Assembly (NCBI RefSeq): GCF_006345805.1
Contig: NC_042998.1
Coordinates: forward strand, 159,154,001-159,218,000
Direction of reading: 5' to 3'
DNA: 64,000 nucleotides
Origin: Octopus sinensis
Taxonomy: Eukaryota
Every line of letters begins with the position of its first letter. The stretch's first letter is position 1. The translations under genes and the position numbers were made by a program. Below, in pieces: positions 6,317-63,972 of this stretch. The notes below the pieces were generated by a model. That model was given only the letters and a program-made list of their open reading frames with translations. It was not told the DNA's origin and did not search any database.

Positions 6317-7919
6317 GTAGCAGTAGTAGTAGTAGTAGTAGTAGTAGTGTAGTAGTAGTAGTGGTGGTGGCGGTGGTGGTGGTGGTGGTGGTGGTGGTGG
6401 TAGGAGTACTAAATAAAGAAATAGCGGGGGATAAGACATTTACACAGTAAAAGATGCAAATCCCAGCTACTTGTTGGGAATTGAAATTTACTGGAACTGT
6501 AAATGAATGAAGATGATATAAGGCATTTGTGTGCGTGTTTGAGAATATTTCATATGTTTTATTGTTGCTGTTGTCGCTGGTGTTGTTAATGGTTTGTGAT
6601 AAGGATTGTGACATAGGCAAAAATTAATCACATTTTAGCATCAGCATAGCGTTATGGTGAAAAGGAAGAAAGAGAAGAAGAAGAAGAAGAAGAAGAAGAA
6701 GAAGAAGAAGAAGAAGAAGAAGAAGAAGAAGAAGAAGAAGAAGAAGAAGAAGAAGAAGAAGAAGAAGAAGAAGAAGAAGAAGAAGGTAGTGGTTGCGGAG
6801 GGGTAGGGGTGAATGTTGTCAATGTTTATAGTATGAGAAGCAATAGGCAGCTCTGTCAAGTAGGTTTGTGAAATGATAGAACCTGTCATTTAAGCAAAAT
6901 TCGTAATATTATGTTAGGATTCAATCACGTCATAAAGCAGGGCTGATCGCTGTTTGATACGTGTACAGAGTATATTCTAGGTGTAATAGGGGAGATCTAC
7001 GTACCTAACAAAATTGGAAAATTCATAATAAGTATTAAGCTCATTAATGGATCATGTTTGAAAACTAATTCTTCTCAGTTTTTCTTATGAAATATTATGG
7101 CAGTTGTTTCCGAGTTATTCATTTTTTTTTCTTTTTGCCCATTTCACGATTTGTATCCTGAAGTGACATGGGGTGCAAGAGGATAGAATAGTTGCGCAAC
7201 ACAAATAAAATAAGGACAAGAACAAAAAAAAAACATTAGGGTAGATGTGTACACCAGGACAGATCGCATAGTGACTGTGTGCTGTAGTAAAAGAAAAAAA
7301 TTGTGGAAGCAAGAGAGAGAGACAGAAAGATATCCTCAAAAACCTACCGAATGTTCAGGATAGAATGGACTCAGCGAAAGGCAGCTAAGTCGCTAGTTGG
7401 TGATGTTAAACTACGTGAAGTATTAAGTCTACCACCCGAGAGGGCCACCGTGGAATTAGAACTCAGAACGCAATGACCCAATAAAGACGTTCTTAAAGTT
7501 CCGCCAATCCATCACTCTCGACCGGTACTTTTTTATCGGTCTAAAAAGAACGAGGAGCAAAGTCAACCGTGACAAGATTTGAACTCAAAGTGCTACAAAC
7601 TAAAGCAATCCCCGCCAGACATTCTATCCGGCATCCTAACAACTCCCCCAATTCGCTGCTTGAGGTGAGTTTGGACCATTAGGAGTAAGTGTTATGCATA
7701 AATTTTAATGAACTTATAAATTCCACTGGAATTACGAATAAAGATACTGAAATCACTACAACACGTAGTCTCTGATTCGGCCTAATACTGAGATTAACTA
7801 TACATGCATCCGTGGTATACTCAACTTCTTAAACGTTGATTCAAAGGGCAAATTGTTAAGTTGATTATCTGAATGGTCATCGTCAGAACTGACATATATA
7901 TAAATATATATATATATAG

Positions 7920-10130: not shown

Positions 10131-10804
10131 TTATATATATGCATATATAGACACATATATGTACATACATACGTATATATGTATATTGCTATGCATATAT
10201 CGGTACAAGACGTCACAAAAACGTAAACAAGCATGAAATACGAAAATAATGTTGGGTACGCAAAAAACGAAAGAAACGAATGGAAAACATAAAAAACGAC
10301 CCTTCATCCAGATATTGTTGTATTTCGGGATGGTCATTTTTATCTTTTACACCCTATGCAGAATTTATTTCTCTTTCGAATGATGCAGACAATAACTATT
10401 TTATACAATTTGAAGAATTCTAATACTAAATTAATATAAACGTTTCAAATTTCATTATAATTTTATTTAAAGCTTAACATTGTAGCAAAAATGAGCAACA
10501 AGAACGAAATGCATATTAGTACATTGTGCCGTAGCCTTTATTCTTAATAACGGCTGAACAATGCCTCGGCATTGAATTCGCTTAGTGATTACAAAATTCT
10601 ATGGGAATGTTTTGCCATATTTCATTGATATAATTTAAAGTATAGAAGACATCTTAATATGGCTAACCACATAGGGGAGGGGGTGTTACTGTAGCTCTAT
10701 AGCCCCAGGAGATCGTCGTCTCCAGCTGGCTTTAGACACCATTTCAGTGCCCTTGAAGTATTTGCAAAGGGAGGCCATCCCTTTCTCGCAAGCCTAAGTG
10801 ATAC

Positions 10805-10845
10805 GCTCGGACTAGTTTCGGGATTATTGTCCCTTATCAACGGGC
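10805..10845 (-). ncRNA. Degenerate minimal hammerhead
   Basis: gcccg-TTGATAA (CTGATGA with two transitions)-ggga caataa tccc-GAAA-CTAG-TC-cgagc. Confidence 0.55.
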
Positions 10846-10867
10846 GGTAATTTCTGTCGCGATTAAT

Positions 10868-11950
10868 TCTTTATTACGATTATAAAATCAGTACATAGAA
10901 GAACAATACAGGACATACATACAAAAAAGAGTTAAGTGGTTCGTTTAAAAATTTCCAAAATATATGGATTATTCATTATACAAAAAACCGTATTTAAATT
11001 GTCCTTTGCATTGACTAATATAACATTACATTAGATTGAAATCTTACCGATATATTTTAAACCCCGGCAACTATTAGGCCCCGCAGCTTTCCTTTCCTCT
11101 TCTCCATCCATAGTTAAACTGGGTTCTGAACCCACCTTTTCGCATCTTCCTTCCATCTTTTTTCATACACACCTCGTGGTAAGGTCTCTTTTCCAGCCCA
11201 TTTTGCTCTTCAGATGATATCTGAAGTAGTGAGCAAGTGGGGCCTGAGACAAAGGATCCTATTGCGACTCCTCCATCTTGTACGCACATGCATTCTTTTA
11301 CTACTGCAACCGTGCAGTGAAAACATGCCTCACCTTCCTCGAGAGTCCAGTTGGCGGTATCATCTTAATCATAGACTCAGCCTACAGCTGTACTCGTCCC
11401 AGATGCGATTAACACGTGTTCTGCGTAACTTATCAAGTCTGACAACTGACGACAGTGTACAAAAGCGTGTGGACGTTTCATCGTCCAACCCGCATCTTGG
11501 ACATGTCGGTGGCACTGAAATTCCGTGCCGCGATAACTTCTCGCGAACAGGTAAAGCATTCCTATAACACTGCCAGGCCAGGGATCTTTGGAAATTATCC
11601 AAATACCCCGTCCTGAAAGTATTTTTAAACAGGTTGGTAAGCTGGTCTTCGTCGAACCCCAGAGCCCCTCCTAGGACGTCGTCGTTCTTTGCCTCTACCA
11701 ACCTGCTATAAAATACCGAGGTGGTATTTCCGCAGCCGGCCTTGCCTGCCTTGTGGATCAGCGTGAGTGCCTGTCGGCACTCCTTTTGCCATAAAGTCAG
11801 ATTCCGTCTTTTGATGCAACCGGGTTTAAAATTCACTAAGGAAGCCGGTCTCGAGAAAAGGATGGCCTCCCTTTGCAGATACTTCAAGGGCGCTGAAATG
11901 GTGTCTAAAGCCAACTGGAGACGACGATCTCCTGGGGCTATAGAGCTACA
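10868..11950 (-). pseudogene. Tx1/L1-clade LINE 3' fragment (zf-RVT zinc knuckle and 3' UTR)
   Basis: ORF 11369-11914: ...FQRSLAWQCYRNALPVREKLSRHGISVPPTCPRCGLDDETSTRFC...; minus-strand AATAAA near 10870. Confidence 0.8.
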
Positions 11951-12049
11951 GTAACACCCCCTCCCCTATGTGGTTAGCCATATCAAGATGGCTTCTATAC
12001 TTTACATTATCGAGCGATTACTGTTTACATCTCATTTTGAGATTTAATA

Positions 12050-13281
12050 ATTGATATAATTGTTTTAGATTACATAGGTTTTTAGCATGGACTTTCTTGG
12101 AAACATAATTCCACAATTCTCGATCGGATTCAGCTCCGGGTTCTGGGGAGGTCATTTGATTACGTCAATATTATGGTGATCAAAAAATTCCATACCCTAT
12201 TTGGCTTTGTGCACAGGACTATTGTTCTGCTGATAAATAGCCCCCGGAGGCATTTGGTGAGTCAAATATAGCACAACATTATCCTTTAGTAGATTCATAT
12301 AACCTACGCTATTTAGCTTTCCATCATCTTTAACTAGAGGGCCAACACCAAAGCTACTAAATGCCGCCCACACCATCACACCCCCAACATCGCTTGCGCC
12401 GTCTTTTTCACACATTTTGGATGGAAATCTTCGGTTGGGCTTCGTCTGACGTATGTTTTGTCATCTGATCAAAATATACAGAAGCGTGACTCGTTACTCC
12501 AAAGGACCCAGCACCAATCTTCGGCAGTCCGTTGGGCATGGTTTTTTTGCGAAATTAAGGCGTTTGAGTCGATTTCTCTCAGATACTGTTGGCTTTTTCC
12601 TAGCGATTCGTCCATGTAGTCCAAATTCTCTCAAACGGTTGCGGGTGGTTTGTGGTGTAAAGATGACACCATTCTCGTTGGACAATTGTTTACAAATGTC
12701 AACGGCTGTCAGCACTCAGTTACCTTCCGAAAGTCGGTGGATTCGACGGTCCAACTGCGCCGTCGTTTTTCTTGGGGCGCCAGTCCTTTGCCGATCTTTA
12801 TATTGACCAGTCTCCGAGTATAACTTTCACGCTTGCATGCAAGCCGTTTTACTGCACTTTAGTTGCTTGCTGATGTTCGAAAAGGAAACCTTTTGCTGGT
12901 GGAGTAATACCATTTTTGCTCTCGTGACTGGACTGAGGCTACGTTGTTTTCCCATTATTATTCAATTGTATAAGAACGTTAAATTATAAAACTATATAGA
13001 GCAGTTAGACTAGTTGTGTGACCACCCATTTTGGCAAATAAAATTGCATACATATTACATGGTTTTAAACTAATTTTGCCGGTAAATTTAAAACGTTTAT
13101 ATTAATTTAGCATTAAAATTCTTCAAGTTGTATAAAAATAGTTATTGTCAGCATCATTCGAAAGAGAAATAAATTCTGCATAAGGTGTAAAAGATAAAAA
13201 TAATTTGTATGGTGTCAGTAACAAAATATTTTGTAAGAAATAGAAGTTTTATCATTGGTTTTAATTTTATTTTCGCCAGTG
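12050..13281 (-). mobile_element. Decayed Tc1-like transposon
   Basis: ATG at 12955: MGKQRSLSPVTRAKMV...GAPRKTT...RNRLREFGLHGRIARKKP...VMVWAAFSSFGVGPLV...YQQNNSPVHKAK...SPEPGAES (PSPDLNPI-like). One end is visible as ...CAGTG|TA at 13281. Confidence 0.85.
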
Positions 13282-15089: not shown

Positions 15090-15570
15090 TCGGCTCAAAC
15101 AAAACTTTATTAATTGAAATAAACACCATCAGATTCAACACACTTTTTGCCAATACGAAACAAGTTTATTTATGCCAGTAGCATAACAATCCTGCATTCT
15201 GGTGGCGGTGAAGTCGTTGGAGGCGTGTTTGGTATCGTCTCGATTTTTGAAGCATTTCTCACGCAGGAAGTTGTCGAGATGCTTGAAAAAAGGGTAGTCG
15301 GTAATCAAGAGGTTTGGTGAGTATGGCGGATGAGGCAAAGTTTCATAGCTCAATTCGTTCAACTTCTGCAACGCTTATCACCGCTACGAAATTTCTTGAA
15401 CCACCATTGTGATGTACGTTCATTAGTGGTTCATTGGCCAAACGCGTCGCTGATATCGCGAACTATTTCAGCTGCTTTTCTGCCTAACTTGAACTGGAAT
15501 AAGAAAATTGTGCGAATTTGCTTTTTGTCCATGTTGTATTCAACGTTCCGGAAAAAATGGCCTAATTATT
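15090..15570 (-). mobile_element. Internally deleted mariner element
   Basis: ...TTNERTSQWWFKKFRSG joined to LQKLNELSYETLPHPPYSPNLLITDYPFFKHLDNFL (YSPDLAP-like motif). Confidence 0.8.
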
Positions 15571-15867: not shown

Positions 15868-16286
15868 CTCTCTTTTCTCTTTACTCTTTTACTTGTTTCA
15901 GTCATTTGACTGCGGCCATGCTGGAGCACCGCATTTAGTCGAGCAAATCGACCCCGGGACTTATTCTTTGTAAGCCCAGTACTTATTCTATCGGTCTCTT
16001 TTTTGCCGAACCGCTAAATAACGGGGACGTAAACACACCAGCATCGGTTGTCAAGCAATGCTAGGGGGACAAACACAGACACACAAACACACACACACAC
16101 ACATATATATATCTACATATATACAACAGGCTTCTTTCAGTTTCCGTCTACCAAATCCACTCACAAGGCTTTGGTCGGCCCGGGGCTATAGCAGAAGACA
16201 CTCGCCCAAGATGCCACGCGGTGGGACTGAACCCGGAACCATGTGGTTGGTTAGCAAGCTACTTACCACACAGCCACTCCTGCGCC
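15868..16286 (-). mobile_element. SINE family A
   Basis: Full-length, low divergence. Confidence 0.9.
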
Positions 16287-17754: not shown

Positions 17755-18540
17755 TTTTAGCCACAAGGGTAGCAATAATAATAATAATAATAATAATCCT
17801 AAATTTTGGGAGAAGGCCTGAACTTTAGAGGATGGTTGTTTGTCGATTACCTCGACCCCCGAAATGAGGAAAGACAAAATTTACCTCGACGTCATTTGAA
17901 CAGAGAAAGTAAAGAACTGGACGAAATCCCGCTAAGAATTTTGTCCAGCATGCTAACGATTCAGCTAGCTCGCAGTCTTAGCAACAATAAACTTTTTTAC
18001 TACAGGCACAAGACCTGGAATCTAGTGGAAGAACTGGTCGATTACATCGACCTCGCTCCTCAATTAGTACTTATTTCATCAACCCCGAAAGGATGAAAAG
18101 CAAGGTCGACCGCGACGGAATTTGAATTGAGAACGTAAAACCGGGAGAAATTTCGCTAAACATTTAGCCTGGCGTGATAACGATTCTGCCTTAACAATAA
18201 TAATCATAATTGATTTTAATTCTGACTCAAAGCCAGCATTTTTAAGGGAAGGAGTAAGTCGATATCATTGACTCCAGTGCTCCACTGATACTTATTTTCT
18301 CAATTCCGAAAGGATGGAAATAAAAATAATGAGATGGTTAGATTATTTTTTATCTATTCGATCTTATAATATTGACTTCTTATAAAGGCATCGAAATTGA
18401 AAGTGTATAATCGATTATATTACTTGACTGGATTTTATTTTTCCGGGCCTGAAAACATGAAAACCAAAACCGAGCACGGATTTAAACTCAGAAGGTAAGG
18501 GGCCATAACTAAATACGGTAATTACAGTCCTGCCATTGAT
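17755..18540 (-). mobile_element. Cluster of SINE family B copies
   Basis: Repeated motifs cgaccccgaaaggatgaaaggcaaagtcgac and ggaatttgaactcagaacgt. Confidence 0.75.
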
Positions 18541-25844: not shown

Positions 25845-27180
25845 GTGAAGCCCAAGTCAGTTCCCTCGTTGATACGGTGTAGCAACGAGGTGCTGATATC
25901 AGAATGGAGTTCGGACTGAGAAAGTGTGGTGTGTTAGTCTTGAAGAGAGGCAAAATCAAATTTATGGACGGAAGTTATGAAGCAGATAGTACTTGGAGAT
26001 TTGGAAAATGGATAAATTGATGGAGAAAGAAATGACAGAAAAATTTAAGGTAGAGTACTTGCGCAGACTGAGACTGATCCTGAAGTCGAAATTAAGTGAA
26101 CAGAATGCTGGATCATAGATATAGCATGCCCAGCTAACTAGATGTGGAACACTCCACCCAAAAAGTGACACAGACAGACTGTATGTACCAAGAAAAAGAG
26201 GACTTATTGGATGCGAGCACAGCATTAGAGCAGAAGAAAACAATATAGCATGGTATGTAAAAAATGTCACAGAACTGCTGTTATTAGAAATAGGAAGGTC
26301 AGGCTTGTGTAGGAGGAAAGACTGCAAAGATAAAGCACTATACAAGAAATTGAAAACAAATGAAACTGAAATTAGGTGTGTAAAGAAAAGAATGCATGGG
26401 ATGTTGAAGATAAGAAAGAGAAAAAAAGATGGCTGTGGATGACTAAAAGTGATTTAAAACCGGAAACAGAGACTCTTGCAAGCACTAAGAACAAACTGCA
26501 TAAAATACAGAAGAGACAACACAGCAGAAAGTGTTAAGTGCAGAATCTGTAGACAAAACGGTGAACCAATAGGGCATATTACCAGCCAATGTTCGTCACT
26601 AGTCCAGAAGGAATATAAAAGACGCCACAATATAGCCAGGCTTGTCCATTGGACATTCTGCAACAATTATGGACTTGACAGAGCAAAAAATTGGTACGAC
26701 AAACCTGAAGGCATCGTCGAAAATAGAAATGCAAAGATCCTATGGGATTTTATGATTTAGTGCGACCATGAGATACAGAACAGGAAACCGGACATTGTCT
26801 TAATTGGGAAAGAAAACAAACTATGCTGGATCATAGATATAGCATGCCCAGCTGACAACAAGGTATGCGATAAGGAAGAAAGAAAAGTTGAGAGATATGT
26901 CAGGTTAGCTTGGGAAGTTAAGCAGTTGTGGTCAATGAAAAAGATAGCAGTAGAACCAATAATTGTCGGAGCCCTGGGAACAGTGAGCAAAAATCTCGAG
27001 AAGTACGTGGAACAAATGGGGGCTGCAATAAGGGGAAAACATTTGCAGAAAACAGCACTGCTTGGAACCGCTCGAGTACTCCGGAAGGTGCTAAAAAATT
27101 AGAGGTGTTACCTTAGTTCACTGGTAGTGAACAGCTGACACTGTAGTACATCTCCAGCATTAGAAGCTGTGCAAAGGTAA
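25845..27180 (+). pseudogene. R4/Dong-like RLE-type non-LTR retrotransposon, 3' half (family 1)
   Basis: DIRMEFGLRKCGVLVLKRGK...KCRICRQNGEPIGHITSQC...KILWDFMI*CDHEIQNRKPDIVL...IIDIACPADNKV...PIIVGALG...LQKTALLGTARVLRKVL, then 3' UTR and (TAA)n. Confidence 0.88.
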
Positions 27181-27264
27181 TAATAATAATGATGATAATG
27201 AAGATAATAATAATAAGAAGAAGAAGAAGAAAAAGAAGAAGAAGAAGAAGAAGAAGAAGAAGAA

Positions 27265-27295
<31 letters not shown>

Positions 27296-27352
27296 AAGAA
27301 GAAGAAGAAGAAGAAGAAGAAGAAGAAGAAGAAGAAGGAGAAGAAGAAGAAG

Positions 27353-27943
27353 GAATATATTCACAGACATGACAGAGTTGGAACCTACATACATTGGAAG
27401 CTATGCCAACATTATGGAATAACAACAGAAAAAAGATGGTATAGGCACGCACCAGAAAAGGTCACAGAAAACGAGAAAGCAACCATACTCTGGGATATGC
27501 CGATACACACAGATAGAGAAATTAAGGCCAACAGACCAGATATAGTTGTCAGAGATCACGAAGAAAAAAAATGCTTTCTAATTGATGTATCAATACCGGA
27601 AGATGACAACGTGTCTCTAAAAGAAATGGAGAAACTCTCAAAATACAAAGACCTGGAAATAGAGGTAACTAGAATGTGGAATCTGAAAACAGAAACAATT
27701 CCTATCATAGTAGGTGCATTAGGTATGATAAAAAATATTCAGACAAATACATAACAAAAACACCAGGACTTACAAACACATATAACATACAGAAAATTGC
27801 ACTACTAGGCACTGCACACATCCTACGCAGAACCTTTTCCATACAATAACCATCAGAGCATCACAACAAATCACAGCACATACCCAAAGCACACAGAGCT
27901 GCGCTCGGTAGTGAAGTGAAAGCACGCTATAAAAATAAAACTA

Positions 27944-30029: not shown

Positions 30030-30498
30030 TCCTCTATGCACAAGGCCCGAAATTTTGGGGAGGGGGCCAGTCGATTAGATCGCCCCAAGTACACAACTGG
30101 TACTTTATTTATGGACCCCGAAAGGATGAAAGGCAAAGTCGACCTCGGTGGAATTTGAACTCAGACCGTTAAGACAGACGAAATACTGCTAAGCATTTCG
30201 CCGGGCCTAAATCCTTAAATCCTTTAAAATGTTCTAGCCCGAAGGCTGCGGCCATGCTGGGGCACCACTGTCTTTTTTATTGCCTACAAGGAGCTAAACA
30301 TAGAGGGGACAAACAAGGACAGACAAAATAATTAAGTCGATTACATCGACCCCAGTGCGTAACTGGTACTTAATTTATCGACCCCGAAAGGATGAAAGGC
30401 AAAGTCGACCTCGGCGGAATTTGAACTCAGAACGTAACGGCAGACGAAATACTGCTAAGCATTTCGCCCGGCGTGCTAACGTTTCTGCCAGCTCGCCG
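30030..30498 (-). mobile_element. Two SINE family B copies; the second (30280-30498) is well preserved
   Basis: gtcgattacatcgaccccagtgcgtaactggtac...cggcgtgctaacgtttctgccagctcgcc. Confidence 0.9.
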
Positions 30499-46699: not shown

Positions 46700-46915
46700 A
46701 TAGTTTCAATTTTTGCTACAGGTCAGCAGTTTTTGAGCAGAGTGATAAGTCGATTACATCGAACTTAGTACTTGTCTGATTCTTATTTAATCGACCTCGA
46801 AAGGATGAAAGGCTAAGTCGACCGCAACGGAATTTGAACTTAGAACGCAAGAACGAACGAAATGTCACTAAGCATTTTATCCGACATGCAAACGGTTCTG
46901 CCAGGTTACCGCCTC
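46700..46915 (-). mobile_element. SINE family B
   Basis: Same motifs. Further decayed copies lie at ~7500-7660, 31010-31200, 37850-38030, 45640-46100 and 49160-49320. Confidence 0.75.
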
Positions 46916-53319: not shown

Positions 53320-53673
53320 TAACTATTAGACATTGTTTTCCTTATTTCTTCCTTCTGTTTTGCATATGCGAATTGCAGGGATATGTCATATGTGGAGTCT
53401 CATTTGTAGAAAATAGAAATAAACAGTCTTTGAGTGCTATTTCTAATCTTTCGGTATGTGGCTACGCAACCTGTTGCCTGCCTCTCTTATGTATATACAA
53501 ATATATATATATATATATATTTAATTTTATTTGTTAGGGAATAAAAATTCCGGTATAACAGGGGTTCAAATTATTCTCAATGAGAAAATATATATTTTCA
53601 TTTAGAGATAGTAGGCCCCTTCATCTCACCATATAACAGAAATTTAATTTAAATACTTACTACTGTATAACTT

Positions 53674-53768
53674 GGCTACACGCGTTTCATGGGGTACATT
53701 TCCCGGTTCCTTAACCACGCCGTATTTTGCTGGAACCATTCATAAAATATAACCCCAATCATCAGGCC
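53674..53768 (-). ncRNA. Type I hammerhead in the 3' pLTR, with extended helix II
   Basis: Minus strand: ggc-CTGATGA-ttggggttatatttt...ggttcc...ggaacc...gaaatgtaccccat-GAAA-C-GCGT-G-TA-gcc. Confidence 0.75.
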
Positions 53769-54569
53769 CCTATCTCACTTTTTCATAGTTTGATACTATA
53801 AACCATATTTTAATTTTTTGAACAAATAAGTATGTGTAAAATAGGTTCACCGTAAAACCCATAATTTAATTCAAATAAAAAGTTACAAAAATAAAAATAA
53901 AAACTTACAAAAATAAAACTTACAGAAATAAAATGAAAAATAAAGATGAAAATAAAAAATACGAATAAAAATAAAAATTTACAAAAACTATGTTCTTACG
54001 TAACTTATGCCTATAAATATGAAATTAATAATATATAGGGTTAAAAATAAATATATATACTTGTGATGATATAAAATGATATAAAATGAAAGGAATGGCA
54101 AAAATATATTCGAATAAAAATGGAAGCAATGACGAATAAATATTTTCGAATAAAAACTATAGTACGAATGACGAAATGCAAAATTTACAAATGATACGAA
54201 TGATAATAATTAAAAATTTACAAAGTAAAAATAACTTAAGGGTAACGTAAAGGAGTATATACAAATCACTGTTGACTCCATTGTCCTCCTACGTCTTAAT
54301 TACGGCTTGACATCGCAAGGTCCAGCGAACTGCACACACACCTCCTTCCTGCTTCTTTTAAACTATTACTAAATTAACATATTATCTTAATAGTAAACAT
54401 AGTCCACGAAAATACAAAAAAGTATCCTGGGAACATTACTTTTTTTATTTCGTATTATTCTGCATTATTCCCACCCTTTAATCACTCACACCGCACTGCT
54501 ATTCCTCCCCACATCTAATGGTAAGTTAATTTAACCTAGTAGTTTCATATTAAATAATAATAGTATTAA

Positions 54570-55620
54570 TAATACTTACGCTTAAATTTAGGATTAGGCG
54601 TTATTAATTAGGCATTTCAGTCTATGTTTACATTTAATTTTTCTTTCCTCCTGAGCATAATAAATGATTCTATTGTATTAGTGATATCTTTAATAATATT
54701 AACTTTAACTTGAGTACCATATGAGACTATCAACCATATAATTTTATTATTATTTTTATTTATATTTATATTATTAATCTCCATATCTTTATTTACACAA
54801 GTTTTATCCATAATGTCTCCATGAATTCATAGGTACATAACAAACATGACCTATTTCCAATTCTATACGATTTCGCTTTACATATTATCTCCCACTTTAA
54901 TTCATAATTGATTTCTTTCGACTTTAAACTCCAAACGTATTTACTTAGTCCTGTCGAATTCCTAAGTTTTACATGAAATCAAGTGCTGTTCTATTCGTTG
55001 TTTCATTTTGTCGAACCTATATACGTTCTATCTGGATAATTTCCAATATCCGGATTATTTATTCCACAATTTTCATTTCTATCTACTTTTACAGAAACTA
55101 CACATGTATATACTACATCACTAACATTACATCTTCCTTTATGTTACATTGGTTTTTATCTCTACAGTTACAACTATTACAGTCTCCAGCACTCCTATTC
55201 AGATGCTTATTTAATTTATTATAATAATATTTATTCAGCCCATACTTACTTATTGATGAAATAATATTCCCTACATTGTTAGTAGTTGACTACCCCACTC
55301 CTATATTATTTTTAGAGAATATTTCGATATATTTCTTATTTTCCATAATAAATGATTCTATTGTATTAGTGATATCTTTAATAATATTAATTTTAACTTG
55401 AGTACCATATGGGACTATCAACCATATAATTTTATTATTATTTTTATTTATGTTTATATTATTAATCCCCATATCTTTATTTACACAAGTCTTGTTATTC
55501 TCTTCTATATTATTTAAAGTATTGTATCCATTATGATTTTCTTTTAATTTTAAATCCTTCCCCATTAAACTCAACCTATCCATATACTTTATACCATTTA
55601 TATTTTTCCTGTTTTTTTAT
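54570..55620 (-). pseudogene. PLE ORF C-terminus: post-RT linker plus GIY-YIG endonuclease with Cys motifs, broken by stops and frameshifts
   Basis: Hand translation: KIIWLIVPYGTQVKINIIKD...IEIFSKNNIGVG*STTNNVGNIISS...CNCRDKNQC/GRCNVSDVVYTCVV...RTYIGSTK/MKQRIEQH...STGLSKYVWSLKSKEINYELKWEIICKAKSYRIGNRSCLLC. This matches the PLE pattern IIWFNPPF...SYSCMxN...CNCR...VVY...YIG...T-LSKY-W-LK...W-I...C-LC. Confidence 0.85.
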
Positions 55621-55997
55621 CATCTTGAATTCCATAGCATTACGGTGTGTTATCCTATTATTACTATTATAATATTATTTTCATTTTATATCATTTTATA
55701 TCATCACAAGTATATATTTTTATTTTTAACCCTACATATTATTAATTTCATATTTATAGGCATAAGTTACGTAAGAACATAGTTTTTGTAAATTTTTATT
55801 TTTATTCGTATTTTTTATTTTTATTTTTATTTGTCATTTTATTTTTGTAAGATTTCATTTTTTATTTTTGTAACTTTTTATTTGAATTAAATCATGGCTT
55901 GTACAGTAGGGTCCGGCGAACCTATTTTACAAATACTTATTTGTTTAAAAAATTAAAATATAGTTTATAGTATCAAACTATGAGAAAGTGAGATAGG

Positions 55998-56092
55998 GGC
56001 CTGATGATTGGGGTTATATTTTATGAATGGTTCCAGCAAAACACAGCGTGGTTAAGGAACCGGGAAATGTACCTCATTAAACATGTGTAGCC
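55998..56092 (+). ncRNA. Degenerate hammerhead in the inverted pLTR
   Basis: ggc-CTGATGA...acctcat-TAAA (G12 to T)-C-ATGT-G-TA-gcc. Confidence 0.6.
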
Positions 56093-56524
56093 AAGTTATA
56101 AAGTAGTAAGTATTTAAATTAAATTTCTGTTATATGGTGAGATGAAGGGGCCTACTATCTCTAAATGAATATATATATATTTGACGTCTATATCTAGCAT
56201 GTTGACTGTCCACCTTTTCGTGTTCAGTCCTTAATTGGTATATATAAATATTTTAATCTTCGGATTCTTTTTAATGTGCTAGACCACTGGTTTTAATTGA
56301 CTAATATCAATTTCTACCCTTAATTTTTAAATATGAAATATATGTTCTCAAACCGATAAATTGACTGCTGCTAATTTATTAACTGCAGGCTAGTTTTTCG
56401 ATTATCAGCGCGCCAAAAGTAGAGGCATTCGAAAGATACATCCGAACGTAATAGGTTGTACTTTTTGCATGCGGGACTCCGGTACCGTTTTTCATCTAGT
56501 ACAGCATATTATGCTCATAACAAA

Positions 56525-56584
56525 CTACGCTGATGAAGTTACAGATATCCTTGTGATATTAATAGCTGAAACTGCAGTACGTAG
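56525..56584 (+). ncRNA. Type I hammerhead ribozyme, array unit 1
   Basis: ctacg-CTGATGA-agttacagatatc cttgt gatattaatagct-GAAA-C-TGCA-G-TA-cgtag. Helix I ctacg/cgtag, intact core, helix II agtta/tagct plus gatatc/gatatt, minimal helix III with palindrome ACTGCAGT, GUA cleavage site after 56579. Confidence 0.9.
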
Positions 56585-57031
56585 GTAATTATTCCATTTA
56601 TTATTTTTCTTTTGTCTCATCCATTGCTTTAGGTCGTGCTGAATTTTATTTTTATTTGAGAACAAAATCTTTGTGGAGAATGGCGATTTGACGTCTATAT
56701 CTAGCATGTTGACTGTCCACCTTTTCGTGTTCAGTCCTTAATTGGTATATATAAATATTTTAATCTTCGGATTCTTTTTAATGTGCTAGACCACTGGTTT
56801 TAATTGACTAATATCAATTTCTACCCTTAATTTTTAAATATGAAATATATGTTCTCAAACCGATAAATTGACTGCTGCTAATTTATTAACTGCAGGCTAG
56901 TTTTTCGATTATCAGCGCGCCAAAAGTAGAGGCATTCGAAAGATACATCCGAACGTAATAGGTTGTACTTTTTGCATGCGGGAATCCGGTACCGTTTTTC
57001 ATCTAGTACAGCATATTATGCTCATAACAAA

Positions 57032-57091
57032 CTACGCTGATGAAGTTACAGATATCCTTGTGATATTAATAGCTGAAACTGCAGTACGTAG
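57032..57091 (+). ncRNA. Type I hammerhead ribozyme, array unit 2
   Basis: Identical to unit 1; predicted cleavage after 57086. Confidence 0.9.
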
Positions 57092-57538
57092 GTAATTATT
57101 CCATTTATTATTTTTCTTTTGTCTCATCCATTGCTTTAGGTCGTGCTGAATTTTATTTTTATTTGAGAACAAAATCTTTGTGGAGAATGGCGATTTGACG
57201 TCTATATCTAGCATGTTGACTGTCCACCTTTTCGTGTTCAGTCCTTAATTGGTATATATAAATATTTTAATCTTCGGATTCTTTTTAATGTGCTAGACCA
57301 CTGGTTTTAATTGACTAATATCAATTTCTACCCTTAATTTTTAAATATGAAATATATGTTCTCAAACCGATAAATTGACTGCTGCTAATTTATTAACTGC
57401 AGGCTAGTTTTTCGATTATCAGCGCGCCAAAAGTAGAGGCATTCGAAAGATACATCCGAACGTAATAGGTTGTACTTTTTGCATGCGGGACTCCGGTACC
57501 GTTTTTCATCTAGTACAGCATATTATGCTCATAACAAA

Positions 57539-57598
57539 CTACGCTGATGAAGTTACAGATATCCTTGTGATATTAATAGCTGAAACTGCAGTACGTAG
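57539..57598 (+). ncRNA. Type I hammerhead ribozyme, array unit 3
   Basis: Identical to unit 1; predicted cleavage after 57593. Confidence 0.9.
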
Positions 57599-57757
57599 GT
57601 AATTATTCCATTTATTATTTTTCTTTTGTCTCATCCATTGCTTTAGGTCGTGCTGAATTTTATTTTTATTTGAGAACAAAATCTTTGTGGAGAATGGCGA
57701 TTTGACGTCTATATCTAGCATGTTGACTGTCCACTTTTTCGTGTTCAGTCCTTAATT

Positions 57758-57818
<61 letters not shown>

Positions 57819-57843: not shown

Positions 57844-58697
57844 CGTGGTGCATTCCGGAATTACTGACACGTCTTTAGGAGAGGCAGTTATAACTGTCCT
57901 ACATTACTGTAATTTTAGTCTATCATTACTATACATCTAATAAGCTGACTTTCCAACTATTATCATTCCAGATTGAAGGTGACGGATGTCACAGCAATGT
58001 GAATACACCCTACTAAACACCGCTAGTCACACCTGACTAATTTGCACAATGCACTCGGGACATGGGATCATTTGGAAGGTCACTATTCAATACTATTTTG
58101 TATTAAAATGAGTAACATCACTACGAAAGCGTATGAAATGCTCTAGACTACTTATGAGAGAACTTGAGTGAGTCGAGAATCTGTTTTTTGTTGCCACAAA
58201 ATGCCAGGCAAAGCAAAGTCCACCGGGAAGCTCTTGATTTGATTTGATAAGAAGGGCATCATCTACATCTATTGAATTCCTCCCGGTCAAACAGTCAACA
58301 AAGAGTACTTTGTGGAGGTTTTGAGAGAATTCAGGAAAATAATTCGCCGCAAAAAGGCAGAGCAGTTGCACCAGGACAATGCACAAGTACAAAATTTCAT
58401 CCGGGTAACCAACTACTTGACAGAACTGGACATCAAAAATGTCCCTCAATCTTCCTGCAGTTCGAACTTTGCTCCGTCTGACTTTTGCTTGCTAAAGGAG
58501 ATGAAGGAGGATGTGGCAAGAGTCCTGGAAACACATCTTCACTTTGGAGGGAATTCCATGGAGCCTTCATGAAGTGGCAGGATTGCCACAACAAGTACAT
58601 TGAAGTTAGAGGATCCTACTTTGAAAGAGATTAGAGTTTTGTACTTTTAAATTTATTTGAAAAGGCTAAACTAAACACTTAGGGAGTGCACCTTCAG
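57844..58697 (+). mobile_element. Internally deleted mariner element with degenerate TIRs and TA flanks
   Basis: TA-CGTGGTGCATTCC...GGAGTGCACCTTCAG-TA; FDKKGII...PPGQTVNKEYFVEVL...LHQDNA...SSNFAPSDFCL. Confidence 0.8.
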
Positions 58698-59118: not shown

Positions 59119-59235
59119 AAGCGGGGTGCTGAAAATGTCCTGACTTTAAGGGTGTCGCGAAAGGTCTGGTTCGAGGCACAAACTTCCGAGTTCTTTTACT
59201 GTGCTCAGAAAAACTGAAGGACTGTTGCAATAAAA
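59119..59235 (+). mobile_element. Mariner-derived MITE end fragment
   Basis: GCGGGGTGCTGAAAATGTCCTGAC TIR-like start. Confidence 0.4.
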
Positions 59236-59289
59236 CACTTGTCACTAAAGAATATTACAGCCGAATAAAGAACATTTGGATCTCAGAAC

Positions 59290-59985
59290 TCTCTGCATTC
59301 AATAAAACAGTGGCCAACAACGTGTTTGTAGTGCCAGTACTCATACCAACGTTTAGGCTGCTTGACTGGACGCTTGATGAGATCCGATACATTGATGTGA
59401 AAACCCGAAAAATACTAACAAGCACACATAATTTTCACATAAACAGTGACGTAGACCGCCTCCACCTCAACCTAAACAAGGCGGCAGAGGCTTAACATCG
59501 ATCCAAAATGCCTTTGAATGTTGCATCATATCCCTTCGGCAACATCTTTTAACTACCAAGCGTCGAAGTGCATCCCTTGAACAAGTTTGCATACATGAGG
59601 CTGATAACATCATAACACTTGCTAGACAACTCCTTGAGCAACACTCTTGGTCTGATAACCTAGAATATATGCCCAAAGAAGTCGCACGACTCTACCGCAA
59701 TGTATCATCAGATGGAAGGATAAGCCTATATGAGCAGAAGACTATGCATAGATATGTTAGTAGAAAGCTCCGTGATGATAGTAACATTGATCATCAAAGC
59801 AGTCAATCATGGACCAATAACCGGATTACTACCAAACACTTTGAAGGGTATGCGTTTGTATTCCAAGAACAAGGAATATCGGCCAAGTACCTGATGCACA
59901 AAAGGGACAGAGATGCGAGAGAAGCCGTAAAATTTGAAGGCTAAAACAATGCGAAGCGCATGTGACCAGCGATGTGTAGCCTGGT
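59290..59985 (+). pseudogene. R4/Dong-like LINE fragment (post-RT region)
   Basis: AVPVLIPTFRLLDWTLDEIRYIDVKTRKILT...FHINSDVDRLHL...GGRGL...FEGYAFVFQEQGISAKYL. Confidence 0.75.
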
Positions 59986-60933: not shown

Positions 60934-61600
60934 CAATGGTTCTCAACTAGGGTCCATATGATCCTTGGGGTTCATTTAACATTTTGTTGTTAAAAATTGG
61001 GGGTAAAAATTGGTTATATTTCTAAAATACACAAAATATTTTAATAACTTCTTAATACAATAACTTCTTAATACAGGAGTGGCTGAGTGGTAAGTAGCTT
61101 GCTAACCAACCACATGGTTCCGGGTTCAGTCCCACTGCGTGGCACCTTGGGCAAGTGTTTTCTGCTATAGCCCCGGCCGACCAATGCCTTGTGAGTGGAT
61201 TTGGCAGACGGAAACTGAAAGAAGCCTGTCATATATATGTATATATATATATATATAAGTATGTGTGTTTGTGTGTCTGTGTTTGTCCCCCTAGCATTGC
61301 TTGACAACCGATGCTGGTGTGTTTACGTCCCCGTCACTTAGCGGTTCGGCAAAAGAGACCGATAGAATAAGTACTGGGCTTACAAAGAATAAGTCCCGGG
61401 GTCGATTTGCTAGACTAAAGGCGGTGCTCCAGCATGGCCGCAGTCAAATGACTGAAACAAGTAAAAGAGTAAAAGAGTAAAAGAGTACTATTCAGTTATA
61501 AAACTATAATAATTTTTTTAACATCTAAGGCTATGGGGTCCGCTAGAGTAAAATGGGGATCAAAAGGGTCCATAGGTAAAAAAGTGGTTGGGAACCACAG
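60934..61600. mobile_element. Charlie/hAT-like MITE interrupted by a SINE
   Basis: Ends CAATGGTTCTCAAC and GTTGGGAACCACAG with GGGTCC subterminal motifs; TSD not convincing. Confidence 0.6.
61075..61487 (+). mobile_element. SINE family A (young), inside the hAT MITE
   Basis: Full-length with (GTAAAAGA)n tail. Confidence 0.9.
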
Positions 61601-61946
61601 ATGTACACCGTGTATGTATGTATGTATGTCATTATTCAGTTTATTTCAAAATTTCTTACCAATAGAGAAAGAACCGATTTCTAACCTAGATCCAAGGTCC
61701 CTTCATTGGCATTTCAACATTAACGACAGGGTATTTTTGTATGTATGCATTTATATATATATATATGCATGTATGTATACATGTATGTATGTGCAGATTT
61801 GTATGTTTTATGTATATATTCTCATGCATATAGTTACATATATAGACATGCTCATATATATTCAAATGATAAACTTCTAGGAAGTTTTACAGATTTTTAC
61901 TGTTCCAGTGATGGATTGGATCTGTAGTCTTCGATTATTTGTCCAA

Positions 61947-61990
61947 ACATAACGTTTTAGCTGATATACCCTCCAGCCTTCATCAGGTGT
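61947..61990 (-). ncRNA. Degenerate minimal hammerhead of the PLE 3' end
   Basis: Minus strand: acac-CTGATGA-aggctg gagggtatat cagct-AAAA-CGT-T-atgt. G12 is lost; the changes are consistent with CpG decay of cagcc-GAAA-cgtt-gtgt. Confidence 0.55.
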
Positions 61991-62074
61991 CTTGGGGAAA
62001 ATTTCGAACTTGGATTCTCATTCCTAAGGTATTTTTCGATGTTGTTGTTGTTGTTGTTATTAATATATTATTTA

Positions 62075-62134
62075 GGTCACTGCCAGGAATCGAACTCGGA
62101 ATCTTGGGGTTAATAGCCCGCGCTCTTAACCGCT
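62075..62134 (-). other. 5'-truncated tRNA-like sequence followed by an (AAT/AAC)n tract
   Basis: agcggttaagagcgcgggc-tattaa-ccccaagatt-ccgagTTCGATTcctgg-cagtgacc: D-loop end, anticodon arm, T-loop/B-box. Not a functional tRNA gene. Confidence 0.6.
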
Positions 62135-62811
62135 TATAAATTTAATATTTTCCTATCCTTCCTTAATACCAATTCCCATACGCTATTCATATCTGCACTC
62201 GGTCTGCTTAGGAGATTGTGTCCTAGCATATGTACTGCTTCTTTTAGTTTTCGTATTTTCCAGCGGTGTTCTCTGTCTATTATTTTAACTTCATCCCACA
62301 GGGGGCGGTCTCCATTTTTCCATACATGATCAGCTATACCAGATTTATCAATATCTCCTCGTGTCACAGCTTTGCGATGTTCCTCTACCCTTATTTTGAG
62401 AGGCGGAATGTTTCGCCTTTGTATAACCTACCACAGCTGCATAGGATGGAGTACATGCAGTTTTTGGTCATATTCTCTTCCATTGGTGGTTTTACCCGAA
62501 GGAGATTTGCGAAATGTATTACTCTTGAATACTGTCCTGATGCCATTTGGGCCGCATATCTTTTGTATCTTTTCGGAGAGTTCTTTCATATAGGATAGAT
62601 AGACTGTAGACAGTTTATTGGTTTCATCCTCTCTTTTCTTCATAATTGGAGTAGATAGTATGTTTTTGGGGTAGTTGTTGCTTAACAGATTGTTATTGAG
62701 CTTGATCATTTCTTCGTGGTGGATGTCATGATCGCTACTTATATTCTTTGCCCGATGTTTTAGGCACTGAGCTCAGTGCCTAAAACATCGAACAAAGAAT
62801 ATAAGTAGCGA

Positions 62812-63074
62812 CTGCGAAGTTAAGCAGTTGTGGTCATTGGAAAGGTGGCAGTAGTACCAATAATTGACGGAGCCCTGGGAACAGTGAGCAAAAATCTCGA
62901 GAAATATGAGGGACAAATAGGGGCTGCAATAAGGGTGGAGCAGAAAACAGCACTGCTTGGAACCGCTCGAATACTCCGGAAGATGCTCGAAAAATAAAAG
63001 GTGTTACCTTAGTTCACTGGTACTGAACAGCTGACACCGTAGTACATCTCTAGCGTTAGAAGCTGTGCAAAGGC

Positions 63075-63075
<1 letters not shown>
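62812..63075 (+). pseudogene. Short 3' end of the family 1 R4/Dong-like LINE
   Basis: KQLWSLE...PIIDGALGTVSKNLEKY...KTALLGTARILRKML; the 3' UTR is nearly identical to 27100-27180, followed by (TAA)n. Confidence 0.85.
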
Positions 63076-63118
<43 letters not shown>

Positions 63119-63565: not shown

Positions 63566-63972
63566 ACTCTTTTACTTGCTTCAGTCATTTGACTGCGGCC
63601 ATGCTGGAGCACCGCCTTTAGTCGAGCAAATCGACCCCGGGACTTATTCTTTTGTAAGCCCAGTACTTATTCTATCGGTTCTTTTGCCGAACCGCTAAGT
63701 GACGGGGACGTAAACACACCAGCATCGGTTGTCAAGCAATGCTAGGGGGACAAACACAGACACACAAACATATACACACACATACATATATATATATGAT
63801 GCATATATACGACAGGCTTCTTTCAGTTTCCGTCTACCAAATCCACTCACAAGGCATTGGTCGGCCCGAGGCTATAGCAGAAGACACTTGCCCAAGGTGC
63901 TACGCAGTGAGACTGAACCCGGAACCATGTGGTTGGTTAGCGAGCTACTTACCACACAGCCACTCCTGCGCC
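63566..63972 (-). mobile_element. SINE family A (young)
   Basis: Full-length reverse copy. Confidence 0.9.

What the first reader, a model, noticed from the sequence alone, without database searches (positions are those of the whole stretch)
56181..57760. 507-bp tandem array with an intact hammerhead ribozyme in every unit: candidate cephalopod retrozyme or circRNA generator
Seen: three almost identical 507-bp units plus a partial fourth between (TA)n tracts. Each has a complete type I HHR (helix I ctacg/cgtag, CUGAUGA and GAAA core, GUA site) and no plausible protein. Established: non-LTR retrozymes in animals are tandem non-coding repeats with one type I HHR per unit, processed into monomers and circular RNAs and thought to be mobilised by PLEs; the described monomers are generally shorter (a few hundred nt or less). 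Inference: a + strand transcript would release exact monomers 56580-57086 and 57087-57593 (start CGUAGGUAAUU, end GAAACUGCAGUA) that could circularise. The near identity of the units implies recent amplification, for example by rolling-circle reverse transcription.
Basis: partly seen in the sequence, partly recalled or inferred. Interest (0 to 1): 0.93.

Follow-up and report, generated by a model that had tools for sequence, protein, structure and literature searches.

The report
Octopus tandem repeat carrying hammerhead ribozymes
A 1.6-kb stretch of octopus DNA holds 3.1 near-identical copies of a 507-bp non-coding unit, each full copy with a complete self-cleaving hammerhead ribozyme motif, so it looks like a new octopus example of the known "retrozyme" mobile elements, with RNA cleavage, circles and mobility still untested.

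Summary
Window 56179-57767 holds three 507-bp units that differ at one base, plus a 68-bp fourth. It is bounded by (TA)6 on the left and (TA)29 on the right.

Each full unit has a complete type I hammerhead (HHR):
- Helix I is CUACG/CGUAG.
- The core is CUGAUGA and GAA.
- Helix II is an 11-bp interrupted hairpin.
- Helix III is 2 bp capped by the palindromic loop UGCA.
- Cleavage follows GUA, after 56579, 57086 and 57593.

A structural descriptor finds only these three sites in the window. About 0.0025 are expected by chance.

Rfam models do not detect the motif. They also miss an intact Penelope-like-element (PLE) mini-hammerhead from Octopus sinensis. The 10.1-11.1 pair is A-U rather than the usual G-C.

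The unit is 33.5% GC and non-coding. The host is an octopus. A decayed PLE with its own dead mini-hammerhead lies 4.2 kb away on the opposite strand.

All sequence-level criteria for a metazoan non-LTR retrozyme are met. Its 507-bp size is within the published 51-972 bp range. Self-cleavage, circRNA, copy number and the parent PLE could not be tested.

Verdict: a new member of a known kind, of modest interest.

The parts
56179..57767 (+). Tandem array of 3.13 copies of a 507-bp non-coding unit (33.5% GC)
56179..56685 (+). Unit 1
   Evidence: identical to unit 3, 1 nt different from unit 2
56686..57192 (+). Unit 2 (A at 56984 where units 1 and 3 have C)
57193..57699 (+). Unit 3
57700..57767 (+). 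Partial unit 4 (68 nt, one mismatch at 57735). It ends inside the unit's own TATATATA tract, so it holds no HHR.
56525..56584 (+). Type I hammerhead motif 1. Helix I is 56525-56529 paired with 56580-56584. Core C3 is at 56530. Predicted cleavage follows A17 at 56579.
57032..57091 (+). Type I hammerhead motif 2. CUGAUGA is 57037-57043, helix II 57044-57074, GAA 57075-57077, and helix III (ACUGCAGU) 57078-57085. Predicted cleavage follows A17 at 57086.
57539..57598 (+). Type I hammerhead motif 3. Predicted cleavage follows A17 at 57593.
56580..57086 (+). Predicted 507-nt monomer RNA 1 (5' CGUAGGUAAUU ... GAAACUGCAGUA 3')
   Evidence: Fold is -122.2 kcal/mol with z = -3.65. 57% of bases are paired.
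57087..57593 (+). Predicted 507-nt monomer RNA 2
56169..56180 (.). Left-flank (TA)n tract. The junction with the unit has 2 nt of microhomology (AT at 56179-56180).
57760..57817 (.). Right-flank (TA)29. Its first 8 nt are also the unit's own TATATATA, so the junction has 8 nt of microhomology.
61935..62772 (-). 5'-truncated, frameshifted Penelope-like element. It shows this PLE class is present in the genome but is not itself a working partner. The linker and GIY-YIG/CCHH endonuclease reading frames lie at 62772-62137, followed by the 3'UTR.
61944..61995 (-). Decayed PLE mini-hammerhead in that 3'UTR (GAAA has become AAAA). Intact orthologous copies occur in O. sinensis and O. vulgaris loci.

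Best explanation
The array is a non-LTR retrozyme of an octopus: a non-autonomous, non-coding retroelement made of tandem 507-bp units, each with one type I hammerhead.

Proposed mechanism. Only the sequence anatomy is shown; every step below is inferred.
1. The + strand is transcribed through the array.
2. Helix III of each hammerhead is only 2 bp (A-U, C-G) under a UGCA loop. The 8-nt palindrome ACUGCAGU in two hammerheads, either neighbours in a multimer or in two separate RNAs, therefore pairs to form a double hammerhead with an 8-bp helix III.
3. Each hammerhead cleaves after GUA. This releases 507-nt monomers (56580-57086 and 57087-57593) with 5'-OH and 2',3'-cyclic phosphate ends.
4. 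Helix I (CUACG/CGUAG) holds the two ends together, and an RtcB-type tRNA ligase circularises the monomer.
5. A Penelope-like element supplies reverse transcriptase and GIY-YIG endonuclease in trans. A nick in a (TA)n microsatellite is primed on the RNA's own UAUAUAUA tract.
6. Copying more than once around the circle, or along an uncleaved multimer, yields the 3.13-unit insert flanked by TA repeats.
For: - The array and its near identity are confirmed: 2 substitutions in 1589 bp.
- The complete HHR descriptor matches only the three in-phase sites in the window. The chance expectation is 0.0025 per window.
- The architecture fits published metazoan type I HHRs, which have a helix III of 1-2 bp capped by a 2-4 nt palindromic loop and act as dimers in tandem repeats (PMC4209133; PMC7229834).
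- A co-fold of two HHR segments uses the intermolecular 8-bp palindrome: -37.5 kcal/mol against 2 x -14.3.
- In the monomer's minimum-energy fold, helix I joins the two ends and helix II forms. The + strand folds with z = -3.65 and the - strand with z = -2.05.
- GC is 33.5%. There are no ORFs above 60 aa and no protein relatives.
- The unit length is within the published 51-972 bp range, and 75% of known families reach 7 units or fewer.
- Both array ends lie in (TA)n, which covers only 1.6% of the window. PLEs show a microsatellite and (TA)n insertion bias (PMC8557442).
- The array ends are not at the cleavage site, as expected if the template was circular or multimeric.
- PLEs occur in this genome. 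One remnant, with its own mini-hammerhead, lies in the window. O. vulgaris has 336 recently active PLE insertions in 31 families (PMC13282606).
Against: - No Rfam hammerhead family matches at the gathering score, nor at E<=10 in a 3-kb slice or a 96-nt slice. The same library also misses the intact PLE mini-hammerhead of O. sinensis, so this negative result is weak.
- The 10.1-11.1 pair is A-U, whereas G-C is highly conserved.
- No loop 1-loop 2 tertiary contact could be recognised.
- The HHR fold (-9.4 kcal/mol) is less stable than an alternative in which C3-G5 pair with the CAG of helix III (-14.3).
- Only one locus is known. There is no second copy in the window, none in JGI metagenomes, and no ORF-level relatives. 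Hence there is no covariation evidence and no proof of mobility.
- The fold z-score is not discriminating: 4 of 24 control windows reach z <= -3.5.
- The (TA)29 could have grown by slippage from the unit's own TATATATA.
- (TA)n tracts are common in this genome.
Confidence: 0.7

Rival explanations
1. The unit is a tandemly amplified pLTR or 3' portion of an autonomous Penelope-like element that exists elsewhere in the genome. On this reading the array is a PLE fragment rather than an independent non-autonomous family.
For: PLE insertions form partial tandems. O. sinensis locus L002 shows one, with repeats at 7192-7480 and 10581-10851 spaced about 3385 bp apart. PLE 3' regions carry hammerheads. 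Xenopus retrozymes are sister to PLE pLTRs.
Against: There is no PLE ORF next to the array. The only PLE remnant is 4.2 kb away on the opposite strand. BLAST finds no similarity between its 3'UTR or pLTR and the unit. Its hammerhead is the loop-less mini type (ACGU), unlike the array's. Three full head-to-tail units with no ORF between them is the retrozyme pattern, not the pLTR-ORF-pLTR pattern. This rival largely shades into the main explanation, since retrozymes are thought to derive from pLTRs.
Confidence: 0.12
2. The array is an ordinary local tandem duplication or minisatellite, produced by unequal crossing-over or replication slippage, whose unit matches the hammerhead consensus by chance. 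Alternatively the hammerhead is genuine by descent but no longer active.
For: - There is no Rfam match.
- The A10.1-U11.1 pair is atypical.
- Only a single locus is known.
- The HHR fold is not the minimum-energy fold.
- At about 0.0025 chance hits per 63 kb, a genome of about 2.8 Gb would hold roughly 100 chance motifs, so a scan of many windows could surface one.
Against: A chance hit would have to fall inside the 507 unique bases of the only long-period array in the window (about 2e-5 per window). It would also need to have the palindromic loop 3 and the 8-nt palindrome typical of metazoan HHRs, a stable 11-bp helix II, and a helix I that closes the monomer. In addition, both ends of the array sit in (TA)n.
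Confidence: 0.13
3. The array is an assembly artefact: one or two real units were expanded into three near-identical copies.
For: The units are almost identical, and repeats longer than a read are error-prone in assembly.
Against: Unit 2 and the partial unit 4 each carry a private substitution. The junctions with both flanks are clean. Even a single or double unit would still carry the hammerhead.
Confidence: 0.03

Closest known systems
Non-LTR retrozymes of invertebrates, e.g. Mytilus galloprovincialis (units of about 350-390 bp; Cervera & de la Pena 2020, PMC7229834)
   Same: Both are tandem, AT-rich, non-coding units of a few hundred bp in a mollusc. Each unit has one type I HHR that lacks the archetypal loop 1-loop 2 nucleotides. 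Both co-exist with HHR-bearing PLEs. The mussel units are expressed as circRNAs closed by a tRNA ligase.
   Different: The octopus unit is longer (507 bp) and shows no detectable sequence similarity that could be tested here. Helix II is much longer (31 nt, 11 bp with an internal loop). The 10.1-11.1 pair is A-U. Only one 3.1-unit locus is known, against about 5000 HHR copies in the mussel. Expression is untested.
Amphibian retrozymes / newt satellite 2 (axolotl Rtz_331 and Rtz_353; HHR_Amex1 and HHR_Amex2)
   Same: Helix III has 1-2 bp capped by a palindromic tetraloop, which implies action as a dimeric (double) hammerhead in multimeric transcripts. HHR_Amex2 has exactly the 2-bp-plus-tetraloop design seen here.
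   Different: The amphibian HHRs keep the conserved loop 1-loop 2 contacts and a short helix II. Their units are 330-350 bp and number up to about 120,000 copies.
Mini-hammerheads in the pLTRs of Penelope-like elements (Cervera & de la Pena 2014, PMC4209133), including the octopus PLE found here
   Same: [quoted passage not shown] An example lies in the same window at 61995-61944 on the - strand.
   Different: The PLE mini-HHR has no loop 3 (ACGU only) and an unpaired nucleotide after A9, and it sits in the 3' region of an RT-EN element. The array's HHR has a 2-bp helix III with a UGCA loop and no extra nucleotide, and it sits in an ORF-less tandem unit.
Vertebrate non-LTR retrozyme families related to PLE pLTRs (Li, Clavereau & Pollet 2026, bioRxiv 10.64898/2026.07.22.740005)
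   Same: The size range (51-972 bp) and array length (75% of families reach 7 units or fewer) include this case. These families co-occur with PLEs.
   Different: That survey covered vertebrates plus three insects and a coral, with no cephalopod. Kinship between unit and pLTR could not be tested here.
Plant LTR retrozymes (Cervera et al. 2016, PMC4918200)
   Same: Both are non-autonomous retroelements whose HHRs would release a monomer that circularises.
   Different: The plant elements have type III HHRs inside LTRs, PBS and PPT sites, 4-bp TSDs and GC above 55%, and they are mobilised by Gypsy elements. None of this applies here.

Membership tests
Metazoan non-LTR retrozyme | Head-to-tail tandem repeat of a short unit (about 50-1000 bp), from dimers to multimers | tested here: met
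   3.13 units of 507 bp at 56179-57767. The published range is 51-972 bp.
Metazoan non-LTR retrozyme | One type I hammerhead per unit, in the same phase and strand | tested here: met
   The descriptor hits at 56530-56579, 57037-57086 and 57544-57593, all on the + strand and 507 bp apart. The chance expectation is 0.0025 per window.
Metazoan non-LTR retrozyme | Low GC content (below 45-50%) | tested here: met
   The unit is 33.5% GC and the window 36.1%.
Metazoan non-LTR retrozyme | Non-coding, with no LTRs | tested here: met
   The longest ATG ORF is 60 aa. A six-frame query found no hit among 5.8 billion proteins. No repeats other than the unit itself flank the array. PBS and PPT sites were not specifically searched.
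Metazoan non-LTR retrozyme | Co-existence with HHR-bearing Penelope-like elements in the same genome | tested here: met
   A PLE EN remnant with a decayed mini-HHR lies at 62772-61944 on the - strand. Intact mini-HHRs occur in O. sinensis and O. vulgaris PLE copies. O. vulgaris has 336 recently active PLE insertions.
Metazoan non-LTR retrozyme | Highly self-paired monomer RNA | tested here: inconclusive
   57% of bases are paired and z = -3.65 with 0 of 100 shuffles as stable. However, 4 of 24 control windows are as extreme.
Metazoan non-LTR retrozyme | Many dispersed genomic copies (evidence of mobility) | not testable with these tools
   No octopus genome can be searched at the DNA level. 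There is no second copy in the window, in two octopus loci or in JGI metagenomes.
Metazoan non-LTR retrozyme | Self-cleavage and expression as linear and circular monomer RNAs | not testable with these tools
   This needs in vitro transcription, Northern blots or RNA-seq.
Hammerhead ribozyme, type I | Conserved core: C3 U4 G5 A6 N7 G8 A9, G12 A13 A14, A15.1-U16.1, and H17 not G | tested here: met
   CUGAUGA, GAA, an A...U pair closing helix III, and A17 in the GUA triplet.
Hammerhead ribozyme, type I | Three helices, with helix I open and helices II and III capped | tested here: met
   Helix I has 5 bp. Helix II has 5 + 6 bp and a CUUGU loop. Helix III has 2 bp and a UGCA loop.
Hammerhead ribozyme, type I | G10.1-C11.1 base pair (highly conserved) | tested here: not met
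   The pair here is A10.1-U11.1, followed by G10.2-C11.2. Its conservation is stated in PMC4209133.
Hammerhead ribozyme, type I | Loop 1-loop 2 tertiary interaction | tested here: inconclusive
   Both helix I and helix II are interrupted after 5 bp, which is a compatible geometry, but no conserved contact nucleotides were recognised. Mussel retrozyme HHRs also lack them.
Rfam hammerhead families (Hammerhead_1, _3, _II, HH9, HH10) | Covariance-model score at or above the gathering threshold | tested here: not met
   There was no hit at the gathering score, nor at E<=10 in 3 kb or in 96 nt. As a control, the intact O. sinensis PLE mini-HHR is also undetected.
PLE pseudo-LTR | Direct repeat flanking, and co-oriented with, a PLE RT-EN ORF, or sequence similarity to such a repeat | tested here: not met
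   This was tested at this locus only. There is no adjacent ORF. The nearest PLE remnant is 4.2 kb away on the opposite strand and shares no similarity with the unit. Similarity to other octopus PLE families is not testable here.

The most novel reading that the evidence does not exclude
This would be the first described cephalopod retrozyme family, and a recently active one. Its insertion junctions would preserve a record of the integration mechanism. The record consists of both ends lying in a (TA)n microsatellite, the 3' junction lying inside the RNA's own (UA)4 tract, ends that do not coincide with the ribozyme cleavage site, and a length of 3.13 units. Together these would point to target-primed, microhomology-assisted rolling-circle reverse transcription of a 507-nt circRNA by a PLE RT/GIY-YIG endonuclease. 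The ribozyme would be a variant with an A10.1-U11.1 pair and a long helix II that depends on dimer formation.
Probability: 0.3. Interest if true: 0.5.

Novelty: new member of a known kind. Interest (0 to 1): 0.3.

Why it matters
Retrozymes are a natural route to abundant ribozyme-made circular RNAs, and they are thought to parasitise Penelope-like elements. No paper in the searchable library describes them in cephalopods. The 2026 O. vulgaris repeat annotation does not mention hammerheads or retrozymes.

A confirmed octopus family would extend the known host range within molluscs. It would add a class of unannotated non-coding repeat and circRNA source to genomes already noted for unusual RNA biology and transposon activity. 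Because the copy is so young, it would also give clean junctions in a (TA)n target, which bear on how PLE machinery integrates circular templates.

None of this changes the known framework. It is an additional example, not a new principle.

Tried and rejected
- **Rfam cmscan.** I ran it on the whole window at the gathering score, on 3 kb at E<=10 and on 96 nt at E<=10. It gave no hammerhead hit, only AT-repeat miRNA noise. The control on the O. sinensis PLE mini-HHR was also negative, so Rfam is insensitive to these variants.
- **TRF.** It missed the array because of its period limit of 500.
- **Second HHR-like string in the neighbouring inverted repeat.** The string CUGAUGA..56 nt..GAAA occurs in both arms (56001-56089 + and 53765-53677 -). 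I rejected it. Helix I is 3 bp next to a C.C mismatch, helix II starts with two U.G pairs, helix III relies on wobble pairs, and the fold z-score is about 0.
- **Search for other copies of the unit.** BLAST against the rest of the window and two octopus loci found nothing. An exact-ORF look-up found nothing. A concatenated six-frame translation searched against the protein collection gave 2974 word candidates, none significant. One JGI metagenome pattern scan gave a single hit without helix I, at about the 0.7 expected by chance (my own estimate).
- **Identifying the exact source record.** A look-up through a window ORF found nothing on record.
- **Testing the pLTR rival.** I retrieved PLE loci for comparison. 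The two octopus loci carry one old PLE family with no similarity to the unit. A profile search mostly returned contigs of ENA assembly ERZ21867824. These share only about 70% identity in the PLE coding sequence and no repeats with the window, so they come from another organism and are uninformative.
- **Fold z-score as evidence.** I downgraded it after controls, because 4 of 24 random windows were as extreme.
- **tRNA search.** The tRNA-like stretch in the PLE 3'UTR gave no ARAGORN hit.
- **Pfam scan of neighbouring ORFs.** It returned only a weak zf-RVT match.
Full report
**1. The observation**

The sequence at 56179-57767 is a head-to-tail array of a 507-bp unit. Units 1 (56179-56685) and 3 (57193-57699) are identical. 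Unit 2 (56686-57192) differs at one base, A at 56984. A fourth, partial unit (57700-57767) has one mismatch at 57735. Tandem Repeats Finder did not list the array only because its longest period is 500.

On the left the array starts 2 nt inside a (TA)n tract (56169-56180). On the right the unit's own TATATATA (57760-57767) runs into a perfect (TA)29 at 57760-57817.

**2. The hammerhead**

Each full unit reads, on the + strand: CUACG / CUGAUGA / AGUUA-CA-GAUAUC-CUUGU-GAUAUU-AA-UAGCU / GAA / A-C-UGCA-G-U / A | CGUAG. This is the complete type I topology:
- Helix I has 5 bp and is open.
- The core is C3-A9, then G12-A14.
- Helix II has 5 + 6 bp around a small internal loop, capped by CUUGU.
- Helix III has A15.1-U16.1 and C-G pairs, capped by UGCA.
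- The cleavage triplet is GUA.

A descriptor I wrote required helix I >=5 bp, helix II >=4 bp, helix III >=2 bp, the full core, and H17 not G. It hits exactly three places on either strand of the 64-kb window: C3 to H17 at 56530-56579, 57037-57086 and 57544-57593.

In 400 first-order Markov windows of the same composition, with the array collapsed to one unit, the descriptor hit once, a mean of 0.0025 per window. Looser versions gave 0.02-0.075. For a chance motif also to fall inside the only long-period array of the window is a roughly 2e-5 event per window. Against that, a genome of about 2.8 Gb would hold on the order of 100 chance motifs, so multiple testing by the first-stage scan is a real caveat.

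**3. Evidence against the hammerhead**

- Rfam 15 has no match to any hammerhead family at the gathering score, nor at E<=10 in a 3-kb slice or a 96-nt slice. As a control I scanned an intact Penelope-like-element mini-hammerhead from O. sinensis (see section 6). Rfam missed that too. The negative result therefore mostly reflects the models, together with the 31-nt helix II.
- The 10.1-11.1 pair is A-U, whereas G-C is described as highly conserved (PMC4209133).
- The minimum-energy fold of the isolated motif keeps helices I and II but pairs C3-G5 with the CAG of helix III. It scores -14.3 kcal/mol against -9.4 for the active fold.
- No loop 1-loop 2 contact could be recognised. The mussel retrozyme hammerheads also lack the archetypal contact nucleotides and still cleave at about 0.1 per minute.

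**4. Likely mode of action**

Helix III plus its loop, ACUGCAGU, is a perfect 8-nt palindrome. Published metazoan type I hammerheads typically have a helix III of 1-2 bp capped by a small palindromic loop, and they act as dimers when two copies are close, as in tandem repeats. Axolotl HHR_Amex2 and invertebrate hammerheads have exactly the design of 2 bp plus a tetraloop.

A co-fold of two 76-nt segments uses the intermolecular 8-bp helix and scores -37.5 against 2 x -14.3 kcal/mol.

In the minimum-energy fold of the 507-nt monomer, helix I brings the 5' and 3' ends together and helix II forms. The fold scores -122.2 kcal/mol, z = -3.65, with 0 of 100 shuffles as stable. The - strand gives z = -2.05. 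About 57% of bases are paired.

I checked this against 24 random microsatellite-free 507-nt windows. Their mean z was -0.9, but 4 of the 24, all within two transposon loci, reach -3.5 or lower. The fold statistic is supportive only.

**5. Other properties of the unit**

GC is 33.5%, against 36.1% for the window. The longest ATG ORF is 60 aa, on the - strand. That exact ORF is not on record. A query made of all eleven stop-to-stop segments of 24 aa or more, from all six frames, found no significant protein among 5.8 billion.

No other copy of the unit occurs in the window or in two octopus loci.

**6. Host and Penelope-like elements**

On the - strand at 62772-62137 lies a frameshifted remnant of a canonical C-terminal-EN Penelope-like element. 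It has the linker (...STVYLSYMKELSEKIQKICGPNGIRTVFKS...). It also has a GIY-YIG core with the CCHH signature (...NCMYSILCSCGRLYKGETFR / ...LKIRVEEHRKAV...IADHVW...).

Its stitched translation hits proteins of Octopus vulgaris and O. sinensis at 73-74% identity. It also hits a JGI protein named 'predicted GIY-YIG superfamily endonuclease', and several hits carry the HTH_animal domain. Interspersed repeats of the window are up to 94% identical to repeats in an O. vulgaris locus. The window therefore comes from an octopus, so 'cephalopod' is right.

The 3'UTR of this PLE family is conserved between the window, O. sinensis (L002) and O. vulgaris (L001). It contains a mini-hammerhead: GACAC / CUGAUGA / A-AGCUGG...UCAGCC / GAAACGU / U | GUGUU. 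This copy is intact in both Octopus species. In the window (61995-61944, - strand) it is decayed, with GAAA changed to AAAA. O. sinensis L002 also shows the classical partial-tandem pLTR structure.

This meets the co-existence criterion. It also shows that the unit is not the pLTR of this particular PLE family, because there is no BLAST similarity, the strand is opposite, the remnant is 4.2 kb away, and the hammerhead subtype differs. O. vulgaris is reported to have 31 PLE families with 336 recently active insertions (PMC13282606), so plausible autonomous partners exist.

**7. Junctions**

(TA) tracts of five or more repeats cover 1.6% of the window, yet both ends of the array lie in such tracts. 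The 3' junction lies inside the unit's own TATATATA. Neither end coincides with the ribozyme cleavage site, and the array is 3.13 units long.

This fits target-primed reverse transcription that starts by microhomology between a nicked (TA)n and the RNA's (UA)4 and then runs more than three times round a circle, or along an uncleaved multimer. It also fits the microsatellite and (TA)n insertion bias described for PLEs (PMC8557442) and the circRNA-template model for retrozymes (PMC7229834).

All of this is inference. Slippage from the internal TATATATA and DNA-level unequal exchange are alternatives.

**8. Comparison with known elements, and novelty**

All sequence-level criteria of metazoan non-LTR retrozymes are met. 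The unit length is ordinary, since a 2026 survey reports consensus lengths of 51-972 bp and 7 units or fewer for 75% of families.

Literature searches found no paper that describes retrozymes or genomic hammerheads in cephalopods.

I therefore file the array as a new member of a known kind. My confidence that it is a genuine retrozyme-type element is about 0.7. I am less confident that the present copy is catalytically efficient.

**9. What could not be done**

No tool here searches octopus genomes or transcriptomes at the DNA or RNA level. As a result, copy number, covariation, the empty site, expression and the parent PLE remain open.

The attempt to reach further PLE families through a profile search mostly returned contigs of an unrelated ENA assembly.

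Noticed in passing
window 53585-56181: A non-coding element of about 2.6 kb has inverted arms of about 510 bp (53585-54096 and 55674-56181, 91-95% complementary). Both outer ends lie in TA-rich sequence, and the right arm ends at the (TA)6 that abuts the 507-bp array. It may be a second insertion into the same TA microsatellite. It also holds an internal direct repeat (about 54660-54800 and 55346-55490). No relatives were found in the window or in two octopus loci. I could not classify it.
   Followed up: partly
window 56001-56089 (+) and 53765-53677 (-): Both inverted arms carry a CUGAUGA..56 nt..GAAA string that passes only a very lax hammerhead descriptor (helix I of 3 bp, wobble-rich helices II and III). 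The fold z-score is about 0. I judged it not to be a credible ribozyme.
   Followed up: yes
window 61935-62772 (-): A 5'-truncated, frameshifted Penelope-like element holds a linker and a GIY-YIG/CCHH endonuclease, then a 3'UTR with a decayed mini-hammerhead (61995-61944, GAAA changed to AAAA). The same 3'UTR with an intact mini-hammerhead is conserved in O. sinensis (L002, about 10933-10990) and O. vulgaris (L001). The pair next to the core changes from A.C to G.U between copies.
   Followed up: yes
window about 62040-62130 (-); L002 about 10800-10880; L001: The PLE 3'UTR contains a tRNA-like stretch (..GCGTAGTGGTTAAGAGCGCGGGCT..GAGTTCGATTCC..) upstream of the mini-hammerhead. ARAGORN calls no tRNA there. 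It could be a captured SINE or tRNA fragment.
   Followed up: partly
L002 7192-7480 and 10581-10851: The O. sinensis locus shows a partial tandem of PLE 3' ends about 3385 bp apart. This is the classical pseudo-LTR arrangement, around a mostly decayed ORF.
   Followed up: partly
L004 8409-9758 (-), 10001-11350 (+), 12780 (+): A contig of ENA assembly ERZ21867824 shares no repeats with the window, so it comes from a different organism. It has two 449-aa PLE ORFs head to head, plus a hammerhead-like motif (CUGAUGA..GAAACUCAGAGUA) about 1.4 kb downstream of the + copy.
   Followed up: no
window 58096-58572; 59133-59941 (+); 26458-27751 (+); 62780-63100 (+); 11372-11965 (-); 12200-12460 (-); 15138-15374 (-): These regions hold fragments of other transposons. 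They include mariner/Tc1-like transposase pieces, LINE-like ORF pieces with a ...KPDIV...GALG C-terminal domain, and a weak zf-RVT match. Pfam recognised only the zf-RVT match.
   Followed up: partly
window, many sites (e.g. 18079-18176, 30378-30475, 46791-46888; 1815-2027, 16066-16278, 61171-61358, 63799-63964): The window is dense in SINE-like interspersed repeats and in microsatellites: (TA)n, (CA)n, (GATA)n and trinucleotide repeats. One repeat family of about 410 bp is 93-94% identical to a copy in O. vulgaris locus L001.
   Followed up: partly
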